This document shows, one piece after another, positions 48,987 through 62,206 of a DNA stretch of 64,000 bases. Position 1 is the first letter of the stretch. Every line of letters starts with the position of its first letter. Origin of the DNA: Adineta vaga (Eukaryota > Animalia > Rotifera). The notes under the pieces were generated by a model that was given only the letters and a program-made list of their open reading frames with translations, was not told where the DNA came from and searched no databases. The stretch covers positions 7,130,001-7,194,000 of the forward strand of contig CP075493.1 of assembly GCA_021613535.1 (NCBI GenBank). Direction: 5' to 3'. A program made the position numbers and the translations under genes.

Positions 48987-50837
48987 ATGTTACATAGTCG
49001 CCGTGAAGTTGTACCATTTAATCAAGTTCAAGGTATTACCTCGACAAATGTTTACGCTTATTCAAATGGTGATGATCATTTTTACTCTGTTGAACGTCAT
49101 TATTTTCATGGAATATTTTTGGGTTTCAAATGGGAATGTATTGAATTCGCTCGTCGATGGCTTTTAATGCGTAAAAGTTGTGTATCTTCTATTATTCCTT
49201 GTGCTGCAGATATATGGATTAAATTACGAACACTCGAACGTGTCACTGACGGAAAACAAATTCCACTAATACCACATTTAAATGGTTCATCTATAAAACC
49301 TAAACGTGATTCATTACTTATTTATCCACGTACATCAGCATTACCATTTGGCCATGTCGCTATTATCTGTGATGTTGTACCCGGTTATATTCGTATTGCT
49401 GAACAGAATTATGAATATTATAATTGGTCGGATAATTATTCACGTGAAATTCCATTACGATTTGAAAATAATTGCTACTTTATCGAAGATCAACATAGTG
49501 TTTATGGATGGATGGAAATATCCGATAGTGAAAATTTGGAACCATTAGATGAAACAAAACTTGATTTAGTATTAAAACAATATCAACAGATTAATTCTGT
49601 TGGAACATTAGAACGATGTGTTATTCCACTTAAAACCTCGTCTTTATCATTTACATGGTTGAATGAAAACGATAAAGCCGAACAATTATTTATGAAATTA
49701 TATGGAACAGATCTAATACGTACAGATACGAATACTTTACCTTATTATAAAGCTAATCAAGAATTATTATTAAATATTGGTGGTGTATCGAATGAATTAC
49801 ATGATATGTTTCTTAAAGCAACTGAATATGTTTTAGAAAATGATGATTTATTAAGACATTTTTGTATTCCCGAAATTTTCTGGCCTAGAATTCGTCAATC
49901 ATGGTCGGATGAACAATATTTAACGATGACAGGAAGATTTGATTTAGCATTCAATGGAAAAGAAATCAAAGTTTTTGAATATAATGCTGATAGTGCTTCT
50001 GCTCTATTTGAAATGGCTGTAATACAAGAAAAATGGGCACAAACCATCAATTTCGAACGCACATTTATGTCTGGTTTTCAATTACATAATACTTTAATAA
50101 AAAATTGGAAGAAATTTTCTTCAATGAAACGTGTACATATTTTAATTGATACAGACCAAGAAGAATTATTAACTGCTTATTATATGCAAAATGTTTTGAA
50201 AGATTCTGGAATTGATTCGAAAATATGCATTCTAACTGATGATTTGTACTGGAAAGATTCCAAGATTATCGATAATGATGGTTATGAAGTTGAATTAGTA
50301 TGGAAATTATGGATGTGGGAAACCGTCTTTAGTAATTATCTTCAATGTGAAAAAGAAGACAATCTAAATCGACAAATCAATGGTGAACATCCGTATCTTC
50401 ATCAAATTTTATTAAATCAACAAATTAAAGTTATTGAACCATTATGGAAAGTTATTCCAAGTAATAAAGCAATTTTACCAGTTCTATGGTTATTATATCC
50501 TAATCATCCTAATCTATTACGTAGTGAATATATTTTAACAGACGAATTAAAACAAGTGCCATTTGTAAAAAAACCAATTGTTGGTCGTTGTGGTCATAAT
50601 GTTACTTTATTTGATGTTAATGGTGAAGCAGTTATTGATGAAACACAAGGCATTTTTATTGATCGAAATTGCATCTATCAAGAATTATTTTCTTTAACAA
50701 ATTTCGATGGATATTATCCGATTATTGGAAGTTGGATTGTCCACGGATTGTTTGGTGGATTTGGTATACGAGAAGATAAGAAATTAATTACCGACGCCGA
50801 AAGTCCAGTGACGGCTTGCTGTATAGTTTGGAAATAG
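48987..50837 (+). CDS. gsp: Bifunctional glutathionylspermidine amidase/synthetase (Gsp / trypanothione-synthetase family); intronless CDS, likely horizontally acquired
   Basis: N-terminal CHAP amidase (KWECIEFARRW, GHVAII, IAEQN) and C-terminal ATP-grasp synthetase (GRFDLAF, FEYNADSAS, WKLWMWE, EPLWKVIPSNKAILP, KKPIVGRCGHNV, QELF, GIRED); 616 aa. Confidence 0.93.
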   Translation: MLHSRREVVPFNQVQGITSTNVYAYSNGDDHFYSVERHYFHGIFLGFKWECIEFARRWLLMRKSCVSSIIPCAADIWIKLRTLERVTDGKQIPLIPHLNGSSIKPKRDSLLIYPRTSALPFGHVAIICDVVPGYIRIAEQNYEYYNWSDNYSREIPLRFENNCYFIEDQHSVYGWMEISDSENLEPLDETKLDLVLKQYQQINSVGTLERCVIPLKTSSLSFTWLNENDKAEQLFMKLYGTDLIRTDTNTLPYYKANQELLLNIGGVSNELHDMFLKATEYVLENDDLLRHFCIPEIFWPRIRQSWSDEQYLTMTGRFDLAFNGKEIKVFEYNADSASALFEMAVIQEKWAQTINFERTFMSGFQLHNTLIKNWKKFSSMKRVHILIDTDQEELLTAYYMQNVLKDSGIDSKICILTDDLYWKDSKIIDNDGYEVELVWKLWMWETVFSNYLQCEKEDNLNRQINGEHPYLHQILLNQQIKVIEPLWKVIPSNKAILPVLWLLYPNHPNLLRSEYILTDELKQVPFVKKPIVGRCGHNVTLFDVNGEAVIDETQGIFIDRNCIYQELFSLTNFDGYYPIIGSWIVHGLFGGFGIREDKKLITDAESPVTACCIVWK

Positions 50838-56080: not shown

Positions 56081-57956
56081 TTAATGAGTTTTTTTCGAGG
56101 TATTTTTCAATTTAGGTCTTTCAAAAACTTGTTTCATTCCGGCAGCATGTTCTTGATGAAATTTAATATTCGATTGTTTGTCCGATGCCCATGGAGATTG
56201 TTTTGTACTTGTATCTTGATCAACCAAATGCGTATATTTCGTTCGGCCAGCCATACCGAAATTTTTCACTTGCATTACTTTTGGTAGAACACTCTTATTA
56301 AAATGATCTTCAAGTGTTGGTTCACTGTAATCTCGTCGAAGAATATCTTCTTCTTTATCCTAAATGAAAGGAAACATCAATGAATATTTTGTTCAAATGA
56401 TAAATAAAAGATGAAATACGAACCATGAAAAATGCACCACGATGATAATATTTTTGTAAAAATTTATATTTCGCTTTCGGTGCTGCATTTGTAATCGTTT
56501 TCGAGTCGTTTCGTAATTCAGCTTGTCGTTCTTCTTCAGTCATGTTACGCCAACGTTCAAGTTCTTGTTGTTCACGTTCACGTCTAAACATTTTATTCAT
56601 TAAAATAATCAATGAATTTCTAATAGAGATTTGACTTACTCATCACGTTCTTTTCGATCACGTTTTAATCGTTCAAGTTCACGTAATTTCCATGCATCGT
56701 ATGCTGCTTCTCCATCTTCATCATCGGTAGTGAAATCACAAGGAATACCACTTTCGTCTTCAGTTTTTTTCATTTCTTCTTGTTTTATTGCTTCTGCTAC
56801 TATCTATAAATAAACATATCGTAATGGAAACATAAAGTTCTTGAAAAAATCAATAACAAACCCTTTGAGTTTGCATTCTTCGTTGATGAGCGAGACGTTT
56901 TTTCTCACGTTCTAATTGTGCTTGATGTTCTTCTTCTGCTTCACGTTCAGCAACTGTTCGACGATCAGTTCTAAAAGAATATATATATATATATATCAGA
57001 CAATTTCGACAGATATTTCAATCGAGCAATTAACTTACTTTCGAACAAAAACAGGCTTTAATCTTGGCATACCTTCATCATCTTCTTCTTCTTCGTCTTC
57101 TTCTTCACTTTCCTCCTCTTCTTCACTTTCATCTTCTTCCTGTTCAAGTTCTTTTTCATCTTCAACTTGTAATAATTCCTTAAAAATAATCAATTAAGAA
57201 TAACATCATTTGTTTATTTAATCATAAGTTTTACCTCTTCTACTTTTGCCTTTTCTTTTGCTTTTAAAATTCGACGTTGACGACTTCGTTCAATTTCATC
57301 GTCGTCACGTTCTTCATCGTCATCATCATCCGATGATTCCATATCCACTTTAACACGACTGCTAATAACTTGATTTTCTATATCCATTTTATCATCATCA
57401 TCATCTTCCCTTTCCAACTCTTCCTCCTCTTCTTCTTCTTCTTCTGAACTCTGTTGAAGAATTTCAGGATCAATAATTCGACGATGTTGATGAATTCTAA
57501 AATAAAACATATCTATTTTAAAACAATCATCTATTTATAAAATCTAGTCTACCGTTCGAAGTCATCATCATTGTGAGTTTCACGTTCTTGTAAACGACGT
57601 AAACGACGATCTTCTTGTTCTATTCGTGCAACTAAAATAAAATAAAATCATAAATAATATCGTGAACAGTAGTTCTACTCTACTACGTACCTGATGGTGC
57701 TTTGGTTTGTTCTTGAAGTTGTTCGTCATCGTCATCGTCACTAACATGTGATTGTCCAGCAAAGTCTGGTCTAAAAAGCAAAATATTTTATTTTGTTGTT
57801 TTTGACAGTTATAATTCAATCTTACCGCTTTCCAGCAACATATCGATGTACTTTTACTTTTTGTGTCACCAATTGTCCTTTGGCATTTCGAACACTAATA
57901 GCACCAGCTGTAGAAAGTGATGGTGCTTTGAAAAATCCTTCGTCAATATCAATCAT
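56081..57956 (-). CDS. MFAP1: Microfibrillar-associated protein 1 (spliceosomal MFAP1)
   Basis: [79 protein letters not shown]. Confidence 0.95.
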
Positions 57957-58229: not shown

Positions 58230-59273
58230 ATGACTGATACTGATGAGAAAGATACTTTAATGAATAAAATATCAACGAAGAATAGTCCTAAAGGTTTGAT
58301 CATTTCTAGTAGTATCCTCATTTCAGTCTTAGTTTGGTATCATGCTCTTTTTCAAATCGATTTAATTAAAAGCAATTGGTTTGATATTATTGGAACATTT
58401 TTTTGTTTGGAATTTTTATATACAGGATTATTTATTACTTGTCATGATGCAATGCATGGTGCGATTAGTTCTCGCGTAAGTTCCATTCGATTATGTAATC
58501 GACGTGAAAACGAAAGTTTTTTCAAGTTCTTTCATGTAAAAGATAAGTGTTAGAGTGCATTTGATTATGAGAAAGGAAGTCAGAACTTGTGCTCATTAAA
58601 CATCCGAGTACTTCTGTATCTGATATTTTATTCCTTACATGATTTTGAGCATAAATCAAAGAAAAATATTTGAGTTACATGATAAAGAAAGATACTCTTG
58701 ATTTATCATTTCTCGTATTTTACTCTCTAGTATCATCGACTGAATAATGCTATTGGTCGTATCTGTTTTTCTGCATATGCTTGGTTTGATTATCGCCATA
58801 TGTATGAGCAACATTGGCGTCATCATAATCATACAGGTATTGCAAATGAAGATCCGGATTATCACGATGGTCAATCGATTGGATTCTTTTCATGGTATTT
58901 TCGTTTTATGTTAGAATATATTACTATAAAGCAAGCAATCAAAATGACATTATGGATTACAATACTTTTATTTGTATTTTCTGTTTCAATATCTAATATT
59001 CTTGTTTATATGTTAGTTTGTGGATTATGCAGTTCGTTACGTTTATTTTTTTTCGGTACATATATTCCACATCGACCAACAATGATCGATGGAAAATTTG
59101 AAAAAATAATGCCATGGGAAAAATCGAGATCAGCTAATGTCAATCGATGGATAAGTTTTTTATGTTGTTATCATTTTGATTATCATTGGGAACATCATCG
59201 ATGGCCATATGTACCTTGGTGGGATTTATGGAAATGCAAAGAGATGAGAAAGAAAATAAATTCATTACAGTAA
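58230..59273 (+). CDS. crtW: Beta-carotene ketolase (CrtW/BKT type), 2 exons (58230-58475 and 58731-59273), likely horizontally acquired
   Basis: Three His boxes in ketolase context: EFLYTGLFITCHDAMHG, HWRHHNHTG...DPDYH, FLCCYHFDYHWEHHRWP; also YAWFDY and RLFFFGTYIPH. Phase-0 GT-AG intron at 58476-58730. Confidence 0.9.
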
Positions 59274-59356: not shown

Positions 59357-59863
59357 TCATCGTTGTTTCGTTTTATCATTTGAAGAGTCAATAATTATAG
59401 TACCAAACCAAGCTTGTTTAGGAAAAAGTACAATAAGTCGTCCGATGCAAACTACTGAAAGGAAAAGACTAAATCCAATTGAAAGAATTGTTCGATGACG
59501 AGTAGAAATCAAAAGATAAATCAAACAGATTTCACTACCAAATAAACCCCAGTAAAGAAAACGACGAACATGAATTAGACCAGCTGTTAAAGTTGGTGTA
59601 TTATATTTTGATGGTACTGCAGCAAACATGAGAGCAGTAATAATAAAAAGCCATGAATTCCACCAGAAAAGAATATGAGTAGTCAATGGAGTTATTTCCT
59701 CAATAGGCTGAAGCATAAATGCAAGAAATGTCGATGGATAAAAATAGATAAAGAAAATCAAACCAAGATTTGACATAGCTTCAGCAAATAAAAGAAGACG
59801 AATAGGTTGATCATTGATTAGACGAAGTTGATTAAAATCGTCAAGTATTGTTTGACGAGACAT
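59357..59863 (-). CDS. Intronless hypothetical multi-pass membrane protein (~168 aa)
   Basis: Single open frame with about four hydrophobic helices; ATG at 59863. Confidence 0.7.
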   Translation of the reverse strand: MSRQTILDDFNQLRLINDQPIRLLLFAEAMSNLGLIFFIYFYPSTFLAFMLQPIEEITPLTTHILFWWNSWLFIITALMFAAVPSKYNTPTLTAGLIHVRRFLYWGLFGSEICLIYLLISTRHRTILSIGFSLFLSVVCIGRLIVLFPKQAWFGTIIIDSSNDKTKQR

Positions 59864-60244
59864 TATTCTCTTGGTCGAAGAATACAACTATTTATCTCAA
59901 ACAAATAAACTAAAAGAAAACAATTCAATGACGACCTTGGATAATAATAGATGAAAATATTCTTCTCATTAAACTCATTCACCTTATATAGATGTAAGAT
60001 AGAAAAATAATACAGTACACTGATTGGTAAATAAGATTTACAATCATTTTGAGTAATCAAAAACAAAGAAAATAGAATCGACGAATGATTTTTGAAGAAC
60101 GGATAATGTATAATGTTACTAAACACTGTACTGAGAGACTGATATGTCTGGTATTCCTTCAAAATGAGGAAAGAATTAAATGAAAAACCAGTTATTTTTT
60201 ATTTCGGAAAACAGAAAAAAAAACAATAATAATAAACTGAATTA

Positions 60245-62009
60245 TTAAGCACTGATCGTTTTAAAGATATTATAACCGGACAATGCAGTACTAAGTAATA
60301 ATCCAGGTATTTGTTTATGCCAATGTACTTCTTTTATATCTGTTTGTCCCATATGAATAAAAAGTAACTGATCAGGTAGATTTTCCGTTGGACTACTATC
60401 ATTAGCAGATGCTTGATCTTTCTTTTCTTCATCATCTTTTTCAACTGCCAAATCCCATAATGTGATTTGATTATCGGCACCAGCTGCAGCAAACACACTA
60501 GAATCTGTATAATGCCATTCAACACTGGTTATAGCTGAACGATGATGTTTAAATGAAGCTACTGGTGTTTGTTTCTATAGAAAAACGATATATATTTAAA
60601 AATTTCAGTACAAAATTTCCTTTTTTTAATACTCACAGAGAATTGTCGTAAATCCCAAACTTTAATATAACCGTCATCACCACCAGAGATCAAAAATGGT
60701 TCAAATTTATTCCAACTAATTACATTCACATCGGATGTATGTGCATCGATTTCTGTAAGCATACATGCTTTTGATGGCATAGCACGAATATCCCATATAC
60801 GTATACTTCGATCAACACTACACGAAGTAAAAACCTTCAAGAGAAAAAAGAAGAAAAGTAATTCATTTTTGAAAATAAAACAATCAGATGTTTTCTTACA
60901 CTTTCTTCATTGGGAGACCATTGAATATCTTCTACAGATGATGTATGACCTATATAAGGTCTTTGATCAACGAGCCATTCGGTTTCATTTGGTTTCCAAA
61001 CATGAATATTTTTTGAACAATCACCAGTTGCTAACACTCCTAATCGAAACAACAAAACATGAAAGTTCGATTTTTCTGATTCTACATCATGTATTTATTC
61101 TATTAACCTGGCGCAACTGGAGACCAATCCATAGCAAAACCTAATAATGAAACCGTTCGTTAAATTGTATCGAAAAGAAAAATCAACATACCTTCTGTCA
61201 TATGTCCATTAAATGTAAATAATGCTTTGGGTGATTCTTGATTTCGAGTATAACTAGCCATCACAGATGAATCATTAACAGCATGAATTAATCGACTTAA
61301 ATCCCAGATATGTACTTTACCAGTATCAGACCATGTTGCTGCTATTTTACGATCATTAATCACTGTTGACTAGAAGAAAGAAAGAAACGATTTTATATAG
61401 AAGATTTTCATTGATTTACTCGTATTCGATTGACACCACCAAAATGTTTCAATGAAACAGATTCAAATTCTGGTTTTGCATCTTCTTCATCATCATCCTC
61501 ATCATCTGATTCGGCATCCGATGTCGTTTCCTAAATAGAAAATTTGTTTGCAATCTTTCTTCTATATTGAAACATACTTTCAACGTTTTTGCTAAATTTG
61601 ACATTTTTACAACCATAACACTATTTCGATCAGGTTTTTCTGCTTGTGTTCCACAAACAATGAACACTGTATGTGGATATTGATTTCTATCCATACCCAA
61701 ATTATCCGGTAGAACATCAAAACTTAAACATGGATCACCTGAAAGAAATATATCGTGGAGGTCTTTCTTCTTCTTCTTTTCATACACAAACTTACCTGTT
61801 TGTGCTTCATGAAACATTTCATATGCACTTTCTTCACGAACAAGTTCTTCATCTTCATTCAATGGATCACCGGGTAAATAAACTTGTTTTGTTACTTGAT
61901 TATTTTCATCTTCGGCCTCCATATCTTCATAGTCATTATCCTCATTTTTAGTGTCTTTCACTTTTTTTTCTAATTTCTTTTTCTTATTTTTTCCTTTGGT
62001 TTTAACCAT
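60245..62009 (-). CDS. GRWD1: Glutamate-rich WD repeat-containing protein 1 (Rrb1)
   Basis: [77 protein letters not shown]. Confidence 0.95.
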
Positions 62010-62206
62010 TTTTCTTTTCAATGATCTAAAACACAACAGCCACTTTATATATAAACAAATGCATCGTAAGAGTAAGACAAATCAAACAGATATTGTTTTG
62101 TTTAATAAAAAACGAAAGCATGAATAAAATGTGACATGACCACGAGCACGAAAAAAAGAGATCTACTTAAAATAGTTATTATCTTTTGTTGTATAGAATA
62201 AAAAAC

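What the first reader, a model, noticed from the sequence alone, without database searches (positions are those of the whole stretch)
58230..59273. Algal-BKT-like beta-carotene ketolase gene with a spliceosomal intron in an animal genome
Seen: an intact two-exon ORF with the three His boxes (HDAMH, HWRHH, HWEHH), embedded among metazoan housekeeping genes, with a canonical 255-bp GT-AG intron. Knowledge: the context motifs (LEFLYTGLFITxHDAMHG, YAWFDY, HHNHTG..DPD, RLFxFGTYxPH, CYHFDxHWEHHRWP) resemble green-algal BKT and bacterial CrtW. Characterised animal ketolation uses cytochrome P450s instead (CYP2J19 in birds, CYP384A1 in spider mites). Inference: a domesticated horizontal transfer letting this animal make canthaxanthin/astaxanthin from dietary carotenoids, plausibly for pigmentation or oxidative, UV or desiccation protection.
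Basis: partly seen in the sequence, partly recalled or inferred. Interest (0 to 1): 0.9.

Follow-up and report, generated by a model that had tools for sequence, protein, structure and literature searches.

The report
Alga-type carotenoid ketolase in rotifer
A bdelloid rotifer (Adineta vaga) chromosome carries an intact green-alga-type beta-carotene ketolase gene with an animal-style intron, so these animals can probably turn dietary carotene into red keto-pigments without the cytochrome P450 enzymes other animals use.

Summary
There is a two-exon gene, 58230-58475 and 58731-59273, split by a 255-nt GT-AG intron. It encodes a 262-residue membrane di-iron enzyme with every hallmark of CrtW/BKT beta-carotene 4-ketolases.

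The genome is Adineta vaga. The gene is single copy, has host-like composition (GC3 21%), and lies between the animal genes MFAP1 and GRWD1.

The same gene order holds in A. ricciae, A. steineri and Rotaria magnacalcarata. The same phase-0 intron site is used in five bdelloid genes, and dN/dS is 0.13-0.31. It is therefore an old, fixed, selected horizontal transfer, not contamination.

In trees the bdelloid clade (100/100) lies with green-algal BKTs (92/92) and apart from 26 named bacterial CrtWs (100/98). The exact donor is unresolved.

The genome has no phytoene synthase, true CrtI or CarR-type lycopene cyclase, so the substrate must be dietary.

Together the two genes give a full carotene-to-astaxanthin route. 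This fits published echinenone and astaxanthin in bdelloids.

No paper in the searched library describes the gene.

The parts
58230..58475 (+). Exon 1 of the ketolase gene (82 codons). It holds a short N-terminus, two hydrophobic segments and His box 1.
   Evidence: NCBIfam CrtW gives 45 bits over model positions 13-84. Hydropathy segments lie at about residues 23-41 and 53-71.
58476..58730 (+). Spliceosomal intron, 255 nt, GT-AG, phase 0.
   Evidence: The boundaries read gtaagt...ctctag, and reading on from exon 1 meets an in-frame stop at 58551-58553. The same site (HDAMHGxxxxR|Y) carries an intron in A. ricciae (167 nt), A. steineri (206 nt), R. magnacalcarata (2900 nt) and Rotaria sp. Silwood2 (148 nt). 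The site is intronless in Didymodactylos.
58731..59273 (+). Exon 2 (180 codons plus TAA stop). It holds His boxes 2 and 3, the Asp-rich motif, the aromatic motif and two hydrophobic segments.
   Evidence: NCBIfam CrtW gives 156 bits over model positions 88-254 of 257. Pfam FA_desaturase gives 65 bits.
58443..58457 (+). His box 1, HDAMH.
   Evidence: The H and H columns are invariant in the 60-sequence family alignment A1.
58812..58826 (+). His box 2, HWRHH.
58848..58865 (+). Asp-rich motif EDPDYH next to His box 2. It corresponds to DDPDFD of Paracoccus CrtW.
   Evidence: D-P-D is invariant or nearly invariant in A1. The motif is described in PMC2288588.
58893..58919 (+). Aromatic WX3FX3Y motif (WYFRFMLEY).
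   Evidence: The W, F and Y columns are invariant in A1. The motif is described in PMC2288588.
59067..59072 (+). The P-H pair of the GTYxPH block, an extra family-conserved histidine.
   Evidence: In A1 the H is invariant and the P is nearly invariant, and the window gene keeps both.
59184..59198 (+). His box 3, HWEHH.
56081..57956 (-). Upstream neighbour, transcribed in the opposite direction: a multi-exon MFAP1 gene (animal pre-mRNA processing factor). The outer limits are approximate.
   Evidence: Pfam MFAP1 matches ORF pieces 56081-56275, 56355-56612 and 56636-56773. MFAP1 sits at the same place in A. ricciae, A. steineri and R. magnacalcarata.
59357..59887 (-). Downstream neighbour, facing the ketolase gene: a 176-aa hydrophobic ORF of unknown family, conserved in position.
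   Evidence: A 163-166-aa gene sits at the same place in A. ricciae and R. magnacalcarata. Pfam finds nothing, and the atlas gives only weak leads of 0.88 or less.
60559..62036 (-). GRWD1-like gene (CAF1C_H4-bd plus WD40), multi-exon.
   Evidence: Pfam matches. The gene is syntenic in A. ricciae.

Best explanation
[quoted passage not shown] CrtW/BKT enzymes are membrane-bound and non-heme di-iron, with the fatty-acid-desaturase fold. An ancestor of living bdelloids took the gene from a green-alga-like BKT lineage. The gene then took on rotifer base composition, gained a spliceosomal intron after Didymodactylos branched off, and has been inherited vertically under purifying selection. Inferred mechanism: the four-helix protein sits in an internal membrane, probably the ER or lipid droplets. 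There are no added N-terminal residues beyond the algal core that could serve as a plastid transit peptide. The conserved His-box histidines hold two irons, and O2 plus an electron donor (in an animal, probably cytochrome b5) oxidise C-4 of the beta-ionone ring. Because the genome cannot make carotenoids itself, the substrate is dietary beta-carotene, giving echinenone and then canthaxanthin. A separately acquired, Bacteroidota-like CrtZ 3-hydroxylase on another chromosome could complete the route to astaxanthin. Shown here: gene anatomy, family membership by sequence, integration, conservation, selection, and absence of the upstream pathway. Inferred: transcription, activity, products, cellular location and benefit (pigment, antioxidant or photoprotection).
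For: Family membership. The best profile match is CrtW, collinear across both exons. All 18 invariant and 20 near-invariant family columns are kept. The His boxes, the Asp-rich motif, WX3FX3Y and four hydrophobic segments are all present. The A. steineri ortholog folds with pLDDT 96.2, and its nearest solved folds are membrane di-iron enzymes: a desaturase-like chain, AlkB and SCD1. That ortholog scores 218.6 bits on the CrtW model, above the characterised Haematococcus BKT (195 bits) and Chromochloris BKT1 (187 bits).

Integration and age. The gene is single copy, 7.19 Mb into an 18.1-Mb chromosome. The window's GC is about 30% throughout, and the CDS has GC 30.8% and GC3 21.4%. The order ATG101-FtsJ-MFAP1-[ketolase]-small ORF(-GRWD1) holds in A. 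ricciae and R. magnacalcarata, and as far as the ketolase in A. steineri. Five genes share the same intron site. dN/dS is 0.13-0.31 over 15 pairs. The bdelloid clade has 100/100 support.

Origin. Bacteria from at least 9 phyla split from the rest at 100/98, and bdelloids group with chlorophyte BKT1/BKT2 at 92/92. The N-terminal motifs W..QY and Y.PP.SD.KG are shared only with chlorophyte BKTs.

Pathway context. The only PF00494 hits are squalene synthase. There is no CarR-type cyclase and no full CrtI. A CrtZ gene lies at C3:7491590-7492000 with all four His motifs. It is conserved in Rotaria and A. steineri and is nearest to Sphingobacteriaceae CrtZ.

Phenotype in the literature. Echinenone was found in wild bdelloids but not in their food, and astaxanthin was reported in Philodina roseola (PMC3779155).
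Against: Splicing and expression in A. vaga therefore rest on gene structure and conservation only. No activity was assayed. The summed CrtW score (about 201 bits) is below NCBIfam's equivalog cut-off of 350, although characterised algal BKTs fail it too. The AU test does not reject a placement of the bdelloids on the stem between bacterial CrtW and the other BKT-like sequences (delta lnL 8.8, p 0.33), so 'algal donor' is not proven. As far as I know A. vaga itself is not a conspicuously red animal (my knowledge, not tested).
Confidence: 0.8

Rival explanations
1. The gene is real and selected, but the enzyme has changed job. It would be a di-iron oxygenase or desaturase acting on another lipid (retinoids, other isoprenoids, fatty acyl chains) and not a carotenoid 4-ketolase.
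For: Activity was not assayed. Identity to characterised BKTs is only 45-50%. The score is under the equivalog cut-off. The family belongs to the broad FA_desaturase superfamily.
Against: Every invariant and near-invariant column of a 60-sequence CrtW/BKT alignment is kept, including the ketolase-specific WX3FX3Y and Asp-rich motifs. Characterised algal BKTs score lower on the same model. Echinenone, the direct product, is reported in bdelloids but not in their food. A partner CrtZ gene is kept as well.
Confidence: 0.12
2. The donor was not a green alga. It could have been a bacterium, another protist, or an alga-infecting giant virus carrying a BKT gene.
For: The AU test cannot reject a basal position (p 0.33). 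BKT homologs sit on giant-virus-like metagenome contigs, one beside a family B DNA polymerase and one beside KilA-N proteins. Several nearest relatives are unnamed metagenome or Logan sequences. None of the four algal genes examined has an intron at exactly the bdelloid site, which would fit transfer of an intronless copy.
Against: The free trees put bdelloids with chlorophyte BKT1/BKT2 (82/96, 92/92), with the virus-like rows outside that group. All 26 named bacterial CrtWs form the opposite clan (100/98). The N-terminal extension motifs are shared only with chlorophyte BKTs. Identity is highest to chlorophytes (45-50%, against 43% or less for bacteria).
Confidence: 0.25
3. The gene is contamination, a misassembly, or a decaying pseudogene.
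For: None was found. The only gap is the missing read-level check.
Against: The assembly is chromosome-scale. The same neighbours appear in independent assemblies of three other species. The gene has a rotifer-type intron and rotifer composition. The ORF is intact in six species, with dN/dS well below 1.
Confidence: 0.01

Closest known systems
Green-algal beta-carotene ketolase BKT (Haematococcus lacustris CRTW/BKT1-3, Chromochloris zofingiensis BKT1/BKT2)
   Same: It shares the di-iron CrtW/BKT family, 45-50% identity, all conserved motifs, and the N-terminal W..QY / Y.PP.SD.KG region. It falls in the same tree clade.
   Different: It is encoded in an animal nucleus with AT-rich codons. It has a single intron at a site not used in the four algal genes checked. 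The N-terminus is much shorter (262 aa against 310-320 aa), with no transit-peptide-like extension. The substrate is dietary, not self-made.
Bacterial CrtW (for example Paracoccus, Brevundimonas, Nostoc; NCBIfam NF045690)
   Same: It has the same fold, the same motifs, and the same expected reaction: beta-carotene to echinenone to canthaxanthin (PMC2288588).
   Different: Identity is only 30-43%. It lies in a separate clan in the trees (100/98). It is not in a crt operon. Bacterial CrtWs lack the algal-type N-terminal motifs.
Animal carotenoid ketolases of the cytochrome P450 type (CYP2J19 in birds, CYP3A80, CYP384A1 in spider mites)
   Same: The expected product class is the same: 4-ketocarotenoids made from dietary carotenoids.
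   Different: The enzyme class is unrelated, heme-thiolate P450 against membrane di-iron. The window protein matches only FA_desaturase in Pfam.
Fungus-derived carotenoid synthase/cyclase and desaturase genes in aphids, spider mites and gall midges
   Same: These are also horizontally acquired carotenoid genes fixed in an animal lineage (cited in PMC4632278, PMC3499245).
   Different: Those genes build carotenoids from scratch and come from fungi. Here the upstream pathway is absent, and only the two late, ring-modifying steps (ketolase and CrtZ) were acquired, from two different donor groups.

Membership tests
CrtW/BKT beta-carotene 4-ketolase (NCBIfam NF045690; within Pfam PF00487) | Three histidine boxes (HDxxH, HxxHH, HxxHH) that bind the di-iron centre | tested here: met
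   HDAMH, HWRHH and HWEHH are present, and their columns are invariant in the 60-sequence alignment.
CrtW/BKT beta-carotene 4-ketolase (NCBIfam NF045690; within Pfam PF00487) | Asp-rich motif beside His box 2, and the aromatic WX3FX3Y motif (PMC2288588, reporting mutational analysis of Paracoccus CrtW) | tested here: met
   EDPDYH lies at 58848-58865 and WYFRFMLEY at 58893-58919.
CrtW/BKT beta-carotene 4-ketolase (NCBIfam NF045690; within Pfam PF00487) | Four transmembrane helices | tested here: met
   This is prediction only. There are two hydrophobic segments in each exon product. Long helices appear in the AF2 model of the 80%-identical ortholog, which has pLDDT 96.2.
CrtW/BKT beta-carotene 4-ketolase (NCBIfam NF045690; within Pfam PF00487) | Full-length, best-scoring match to the family profile above the curated cut-off | tested here: inconclusive
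   The match is the best hit and is collinear over model positions 13-254 of 257. However, 45 + 156 bits is below the cut-off of 350. The characterised Haematococcus and Chromochloris BKTs also fall below it (195 and 187 bits), and the A. steineri ortholog scores 218.6. The cut-off is tuned to bacteria.
CrtW/BKT beta-carotene 4-ketolase (NCBIfam NF045690; within Pfam PF00487) | Placement inside the clade of characterised ketolases in a tree | tested here: met
   The gene lies within the clade that holds Haematococcus CRTW and Chromochloris BKT1/2 (82/96; 92/92 and 99/94). The exact position is not fixed by the AU test.
CrtW/BKT beta-carotene 4-ketolase (NCBIfam NF045690; within Pfam PF00487) | [quoted passage not shown] | not testable with these tools
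   This needs heterologous expression and HPLC.
CrtR-type beta-carotene hydroxylase (NF045688) | Best or significant full-length match to the CrtR profile | tested here: not met
   Exon 2 scores only 18 bits against a cut-off of 475.
CrtO-type ketolase (CrtI-like flavoprotein, NF045689) | FAD-binding CrtI-family fold | tested here: not met
   The window gene does not match this model. The genome's only CrtO-model hits are in a different multi-exon gene on C5.
Animal P450 carotenoid ketolases | Cytochrome P450 domain | tested here: not met
   Pfam finds only FA_desaturase.
Domesticated horizontally transferred gene of bdelloid rotifers | No relatives in other animals, with the nearest relatives non-metazoan | tested here: met
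   The named hits are bdelloids only, then green algae and bacteria.
Domesticated horizontally transferred gene of bdelloid rotifers | Physical linkage to host genes, host-like composition, a spliceosomal intron, and purifying selection | tested here: met
Domesticated horizontally transferred gene of bdelloid rotifers | Transcription and correct splicing | not tested

The most novel reading that the evidence does not exclude
Bdelloid rotifers own a complete two-enzyme route from dietary beta-carotene to astaxanthin, put together from different kingdoms. It combines a green-alga-type BKT ketolase (this gene) with a Bacteroidota-type CrtZ hydroxylase on another chromosome. Both were acquired before the Adineta-Rotaria split and kept under selection. 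If so, bdelloids would be the only animals known to make ketocarotenoids without a cytochrome P450. It would also give a genetic basis for the echinenone and astaxanthin long reported in them, possibly as part of their protection against oxidative, UV or desiccation damage.
Probability: 0.45. Interest if true: 0.75.

Novelty: new member of a known kind. Interest (0 to 1): 0.65.

Why it matters
How animals make red ketocarotenoids has so far been answered only with cytochrome P450s, in birds, fish and mites. This gene points to a third, independent solution: an imported plant-world di-iron ketolase, apparently paired with an imported bacterial hydroxylase.

It turns old pigment observations into a directly testable two-gene hypothesis. 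Those observations are astaxanthin in Philodina (1962) and echinenone in wild bdelloids but not in their food (2013).

It is also a clean case of a foreign gene becoming an ordinary animal gene. The evidence for this is intron gain, host-like codon composition, and fixed gene order across two bdelloid families.

If active in an animal membrane with an animal electron donor, the enzyme could be of practical use for making ketocarotenoids in animal cells.

Tried and rejected

2. The spliced protein was never handed to a search tool. All searches used exon 1 and exon 2 by reference, or the full-length A. steineri ortholog P0001. In one script the exons of six species were joined in memory, with a temporary file in /scratch for MAFFT, only to compute dN/dS.

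3. Literature. 'bdelloid' + 'ketolase', 'rotifer' + 'ketolase' and related searches found no paper on this gene. The supplement of Boschetti et al. 2012 lists only a KEGG 'carotenoid biosynthesis' row, with one EC number represented purely by foreign transcripts and no gene named.

4. Finding CrtZ. The Pfam PF04116 route gave nine ORFs, none CrtZ-like by NCBIfam. A back-translated HDGLVH pattern gave four hits at chance level. Both failed because the rotifer motif reads HDGFIHHR and its Pfam score is sub-threshold. A bacterial CrtZ taken from beside a crtW gene (L105) then found it.

5. Was the intron inherited from the donor? Haematococcus, Astrephomene and Monoraphidium have no intron at the site. 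Scenedesmus has one 1 nt upstream in another phase, in a region with an assembly frameshift. I rejected this as evidence of inheritance.

6. Dating against the old genome doubling. The FtsJ and GRWD1 neighbours are single copy, so there is no second region to compare.

7. AU test. The tree with bdelloids held together with the 16 bacterial-type CrtW rows of the tree was not rejected (p 0.33). I therefore do not claim a resolved donor.

8. The NCBIfam cut-off as a membership criterion is uninformative for eukaryotic BKTs.

9. Foldseek against the PDB shows no solved CrtW structure, only distant di-iron membrane enzymes.

Full report
**What is there.**
- An ATG at 58230 opens an 82-codon exon that ends ...HDAMHGAISSR at 58475.
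- A 255-nt intron follows (58476-58730, gtaagt...ctctag, phase 0). Reading on from exon 1 meets an in-frame stop at 58551-58553.
- A 180-codon exon runs from 58731 to the TAA at 59271-59273.
- The exons were concatenated only inside one script, to compute codon statistics.

**What family it is.**
- Pfam sees only FA_desaturase (65 bits).
- NCBIfam's best model for both exons is the beta-carotene ketolase CrtW. Exon 1 covers model positions 13-84 (45 bits) and exon 2 covers 88-254 of 257 (156 bits), so the match is collinear. The CrtR hydroxylase model scores 18 bits.
- The summed score is below the curated cut-off of 350. However, the experimentally characterised Haematococcus CRTW/BKT (195 bits) and Chromochloris BKT1 (187 bits) also fail it, and the A. 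steineri ortholog scores 218.6. The cut-off therefore says nothing about eukaryotic members.
- In a 60-sequence alignment of bdelloid, algal, virus-like and bacterial homologs, 18 columns are invariant and 20 nearly so. The window gene keeps all 38.
- These columns include the three His boxes (HDAMH, HWRHH, HWEHH). They also include the Asp-rich stretch beside box 2 (EDPDYH) and the aromatic WX3FX3Y motif (WYFRFMLEY). A review of the Paracoccus CrtW mutagenesis work lists both motifs as typical of these ketolases, along with four transmembrane segments (PMC2288588).
- Hydropathy finds two hydrophobic segments in each exon product.
- The 80%-identical A. steineri ortholog folds with mean pLDDT 96.2 and pTM 0.92. 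Its nearest solved folds are membrane di-iron enzymes: a desaturase-like subunit of the Chlamydomonas Ycf2-FtsHi complex, AlkB and SCD1. No CrtW structure has been solved.

**Whose genome, and is the gene really in it.**
- The window is 7.13-7.19 Mb of an 18.1-Mb contig in a 100.8-Mb, six-contig assembly.
- A protein encoded elsewhere in the same assembly is 100% identical to an NCBI entry named Adineta vaga, on a contig of the same length as this assembly's C3, 20,354,754 bases.
- The published AV20 assembly of A. vaga also has six chromosome-scale scaffolds (PMC8494291).
- The ketolase is single copy.
- Window GC is flat at about 30%. The CDS has GC 30.8% and GC3 21.4%, like the intron at 29.8%.
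- Its neighbours are multi-exon animal genes. MFAP1 lies upstream on the other strand (Pfam on three exon pieces). FtsJ, a CDGSH-type gene and a GRWD1-like WD40 gene are also present.
- The order ATG101-FtsJ-MFAP1-[ketolase]-small ORF-GRWD1 recurs in two A. ricciae assemblies. It holds as far as the ketolase in A. steineri. In Rotaria magnacalcarata it holds from ATG101 to the small ORF, where the contig ends. The neighbourhood is therefore shared by two bdelloid families.
- Contamination or misassembly is effectively excluded, although I could not add a read-level check.

**Intron and selection.**
- Mapping the public gene models onto their DNA shows an intron at the identical phase-0 site (HDAMHGxxxxR|Y) in four further genes: A. 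ricciae (167 nt), A. steineri (206 nt), R. magnacalcarata (2900 nt), and a second, non-syntenic Rotaria sp. Silwood2 gene (148 nt).
- Several metagenome ORFs begin with intron-derived residues just before the same exon-2 start.
- Didymodactylos carnosus has no intron at this site. Its model stops eight residues after His box 3, and a WWELWK-coding stretch follows about 115 nt downstream in another frame. This could be an unannotated intron or a frameshift; I did not resolve it.
- The algal genes checked do not share the bdelloid site. Haematococcus, Astrephomene and Monoraphidium have introns elsewhere. Scenedesmus has one 1 nt upstream in another phase.
- The simplest reading is that the intron was gained in the rotifer lineage after Didymodactylos branched off.
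- Pairwise dN/dS among the six bdelloid genes is 0.13-0.31, so the protein is under purifying selection.

**Origin.**
- Named hits are bdelloids only (56-80% identity), then green-algal BKTs (42-49%), then bacteria. No other animal appears.
- An exhaustive HMMER scan of 1.84 billion cluster representatives gave 593 family members. A single representative (P0002) stands for the bdelloid cluster at the top of the list.
- A careful tree of 55 rows gives the bdelloids 100/100. It places them in an unresolved group with the chlorophyte BKT1 and BKT2 clades (82/96), inside a 39-row clade separated from bacterial-type CrtW (100/99).
- A second careful tree uses 26 named bacterial CrtWs from at least nine phyla. 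It separates all bacteria from the rest at 100/98, puts the bdelloids in a 25-row clade with chlorophyte BKTs at 92/92, and places two giant-virus-like sequences just outside at 99/94. Its bootstrap had not fully settled.
- The N-terminal region adds a qualitative link. The motifs W..QY and Y.PP.SD.KG are found only in chlorophyte BKTs and bdelloids. They are complete in Didymodactylos and eroded in Adineta.
- Against over-reading this, an AU test does not reject a tree in which the bdelloids attach on the stem between the bacterial clan and all the others (delta lnL 8.8, p 0.33).
- I therefore call the gene alga-type with fair support, but the donor is unresolved.
- The bdelloid gene tree (Didymodactylos, then the Silwood2 copy, then Rotaria plus Adineta) fits one early acquisition and vertical descent. 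The Silwood2/Silwood1 type is probably an old paralog.

**Pathway context.**
- The genome's only PF00494 matches are squalene synthase (TIGR01559, 436 bits).
- There is no CarR-type lycopene cyclase.
- The CrtI and CrtO models hit only FAD-binding N-termini, plus one multi-exon CrtI-family gene on C5 that I take, without testing, for a retinol-saturase-like animal gene.
- The animal therefore cannot make beta-carotene, and the ketolase must work on dietary carotenoids.
My first two attempts to find it failed.
- A bacterial CrtZ taken from beside a crtW gene (Rhizorhabdus, L105) then hit an intronless 154-codon ORF at C3:7491590-7492000 (E 4e-27).
- That ORF has all four His motifs of CrtZ hydroxylases, and motif 1 reads HDGFIHHR.
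- It is conserved at 65-71% in Rotaria sp. Silwood1/2 and A. steineri. Its nearest non-rotifer relatives are Sphingobacteriaceae CrtZ at 50-55%.
- It sits among RRN3, TBCC and GMP-synthase exons.
- The rotifer thus holds both ring-modifying enzymes of the astaxanthin route, from two different donor groups, on different chromosomes.

**Fit with biology.**
- Mialet et al. 2013 found echinenone, the first product of a 4-ketolase acting on beta-carotene, in wild bdelloids but not in their biofilm food. They proposed conversion from beta-carotene. They also cite Gilchrist and Green 1962 for astaxanthin in Philodina roseola (PMC3779155).
- Boschetti et al. 2012 flagged the KEGG carotenoid pathway as enriched for foreign transcripts in A. 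ricciae, without naming genes.
- Ketolases implicated in animals so far are P450s (PMC11676133).
- No paper in the searched library links rotifers to a CrtW/BKT gene. Public records carry only automatic names.

**Mechanism proposed.**
- Shown: a conserved, selected CrtW/BKT-family gene with a complete set of metal-binding and family motifs, in a genome that lacks the upstream pathway and holds a CrtZ.
- Inferred: the protein is made and spliced as modelled.
- Inferred: it sits in the ER or lipid-droplet membrane. It has no added N-terminal residues beyond the algal core, so nothing that could serve as a plastid transit peptide.
- Inferred: it draws electrons from an animal donor such as cytochrome b5, and it oxidises C-4 and C-4' of beta-rings of dietary carotenoids.
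- Inferred: with CrtZ the end product is astaxanthin.
- The benefit (colour, quenching of reactive oxygen during desiccation, or UV protection) is speculation.

**Verdict.** This is a new member of a known enzyme family in an unexpected host. It is made more interesting by the partner CrtZ, and it is untested for expression and activity.

Noticed in passing
G000 C3:7491590-7492000 (-), = L131:1453-1917 (-); outside the window: An intronless 154-codon CrtZ-type beta-carotene 3-hydroxylase with all four His motifs. It is conserved in Rotaria and A. steineri and is nearest to Sphingobacteriaceae CrtZ (50-55% identity). It lies among RRN3, TBCC and GMP-synthase exons. With the ketolase it would complete a beta-carotene-to-astaxanthin route. 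NCBI annotates it in A. vaga only as a 138-aa hypothetical protein.
   Followed up: yes
window 48987-50837 (+): An intronless 616-aa ORF with CHAP and glutathionylspermidine synthase domains (NCBIfam bifunctional amidase/synthase, 489 bits). It lies 7.4 kb from the ketolase and is syntenic in A. ricciae and A. steineri. Foreign glutathionylspermidine/trypanothione synthase transcripts were reported in A. ricciae (PMC3499245). A second antioxidant-related foreign gene therefore sits in the same neighbourhood.
   Followed up: partly
L019 (ENA metagenome scaffold) and L020 (JGI metagenome contig): BKT/CrtW homologs P0075 and P0033 sit on contigs that look like giant viruses. One is beside a 1143-aa family B DNA polymerase and an ABC1 kinase; the other is beside two KilA-N proteins and a 1415-aa ORF. 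In the trees they branch just outside the chlorophyte-plus-bdelloid group.
   Followed up: partly
window 59357-59887 (-): A 176-aa hydrophobic ORF faces the ketolase gene and is conserved at the same place in Adineta and Rotaria. It has no Pfam match, and the atlas gives only weak leads (TP53I11-like or Erg28-like membrane proteins, 0.88 or less).
   Followed up: partly
L013:4420-5400 and L014 (Didymodactylos carnosus): The Didymodactylos ketolase has no intron at the Adineta/Rotaria site. Its model stops eight residues after His box 3, and the conserved WWELWK tail is coded about 115 nt downstream in another frame. This could be an unannotated 3' intron or a frameshift. The same structure appears in two assemblies.
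   Followed up: partly
L012:8001-8949 (Rotaria sp. Silwood2): A second type of bdelloid ketolase (P0010; P0067 in Silwood1) branches outside Rotaria plus Adineta and has the same intron site. It lies in a different, transposase-rich context beside an ADP-ribosyltransferase gene. It is probably an old paralog that A. vaga has lost.
   Followed up: partly
G000 C5:13847574-13850139 (-): A multi-exon CrtI/CrtO-family gene, with about 217 bits summed on the CrtO model against a cut-off of 1000. It is possibly a retinol-saturase-like animal gene and was not examined further.
   Followed up: no
L016:2090-2340 (Scenedesmus sp. NREL 46B-D3): The public BKT gene model skips His box 1, because the assembly has a 1-nt frameshift within the FIT(T)HDAMHG coding stretch. 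Read by hand, the intron there lies 1 nt upstream of the bdelloid intron site.
   Followed up: partly
No A. vaga entry appeared among the ketolase homologs, although A. vaga proteins are in the collection.
   Followed up: no
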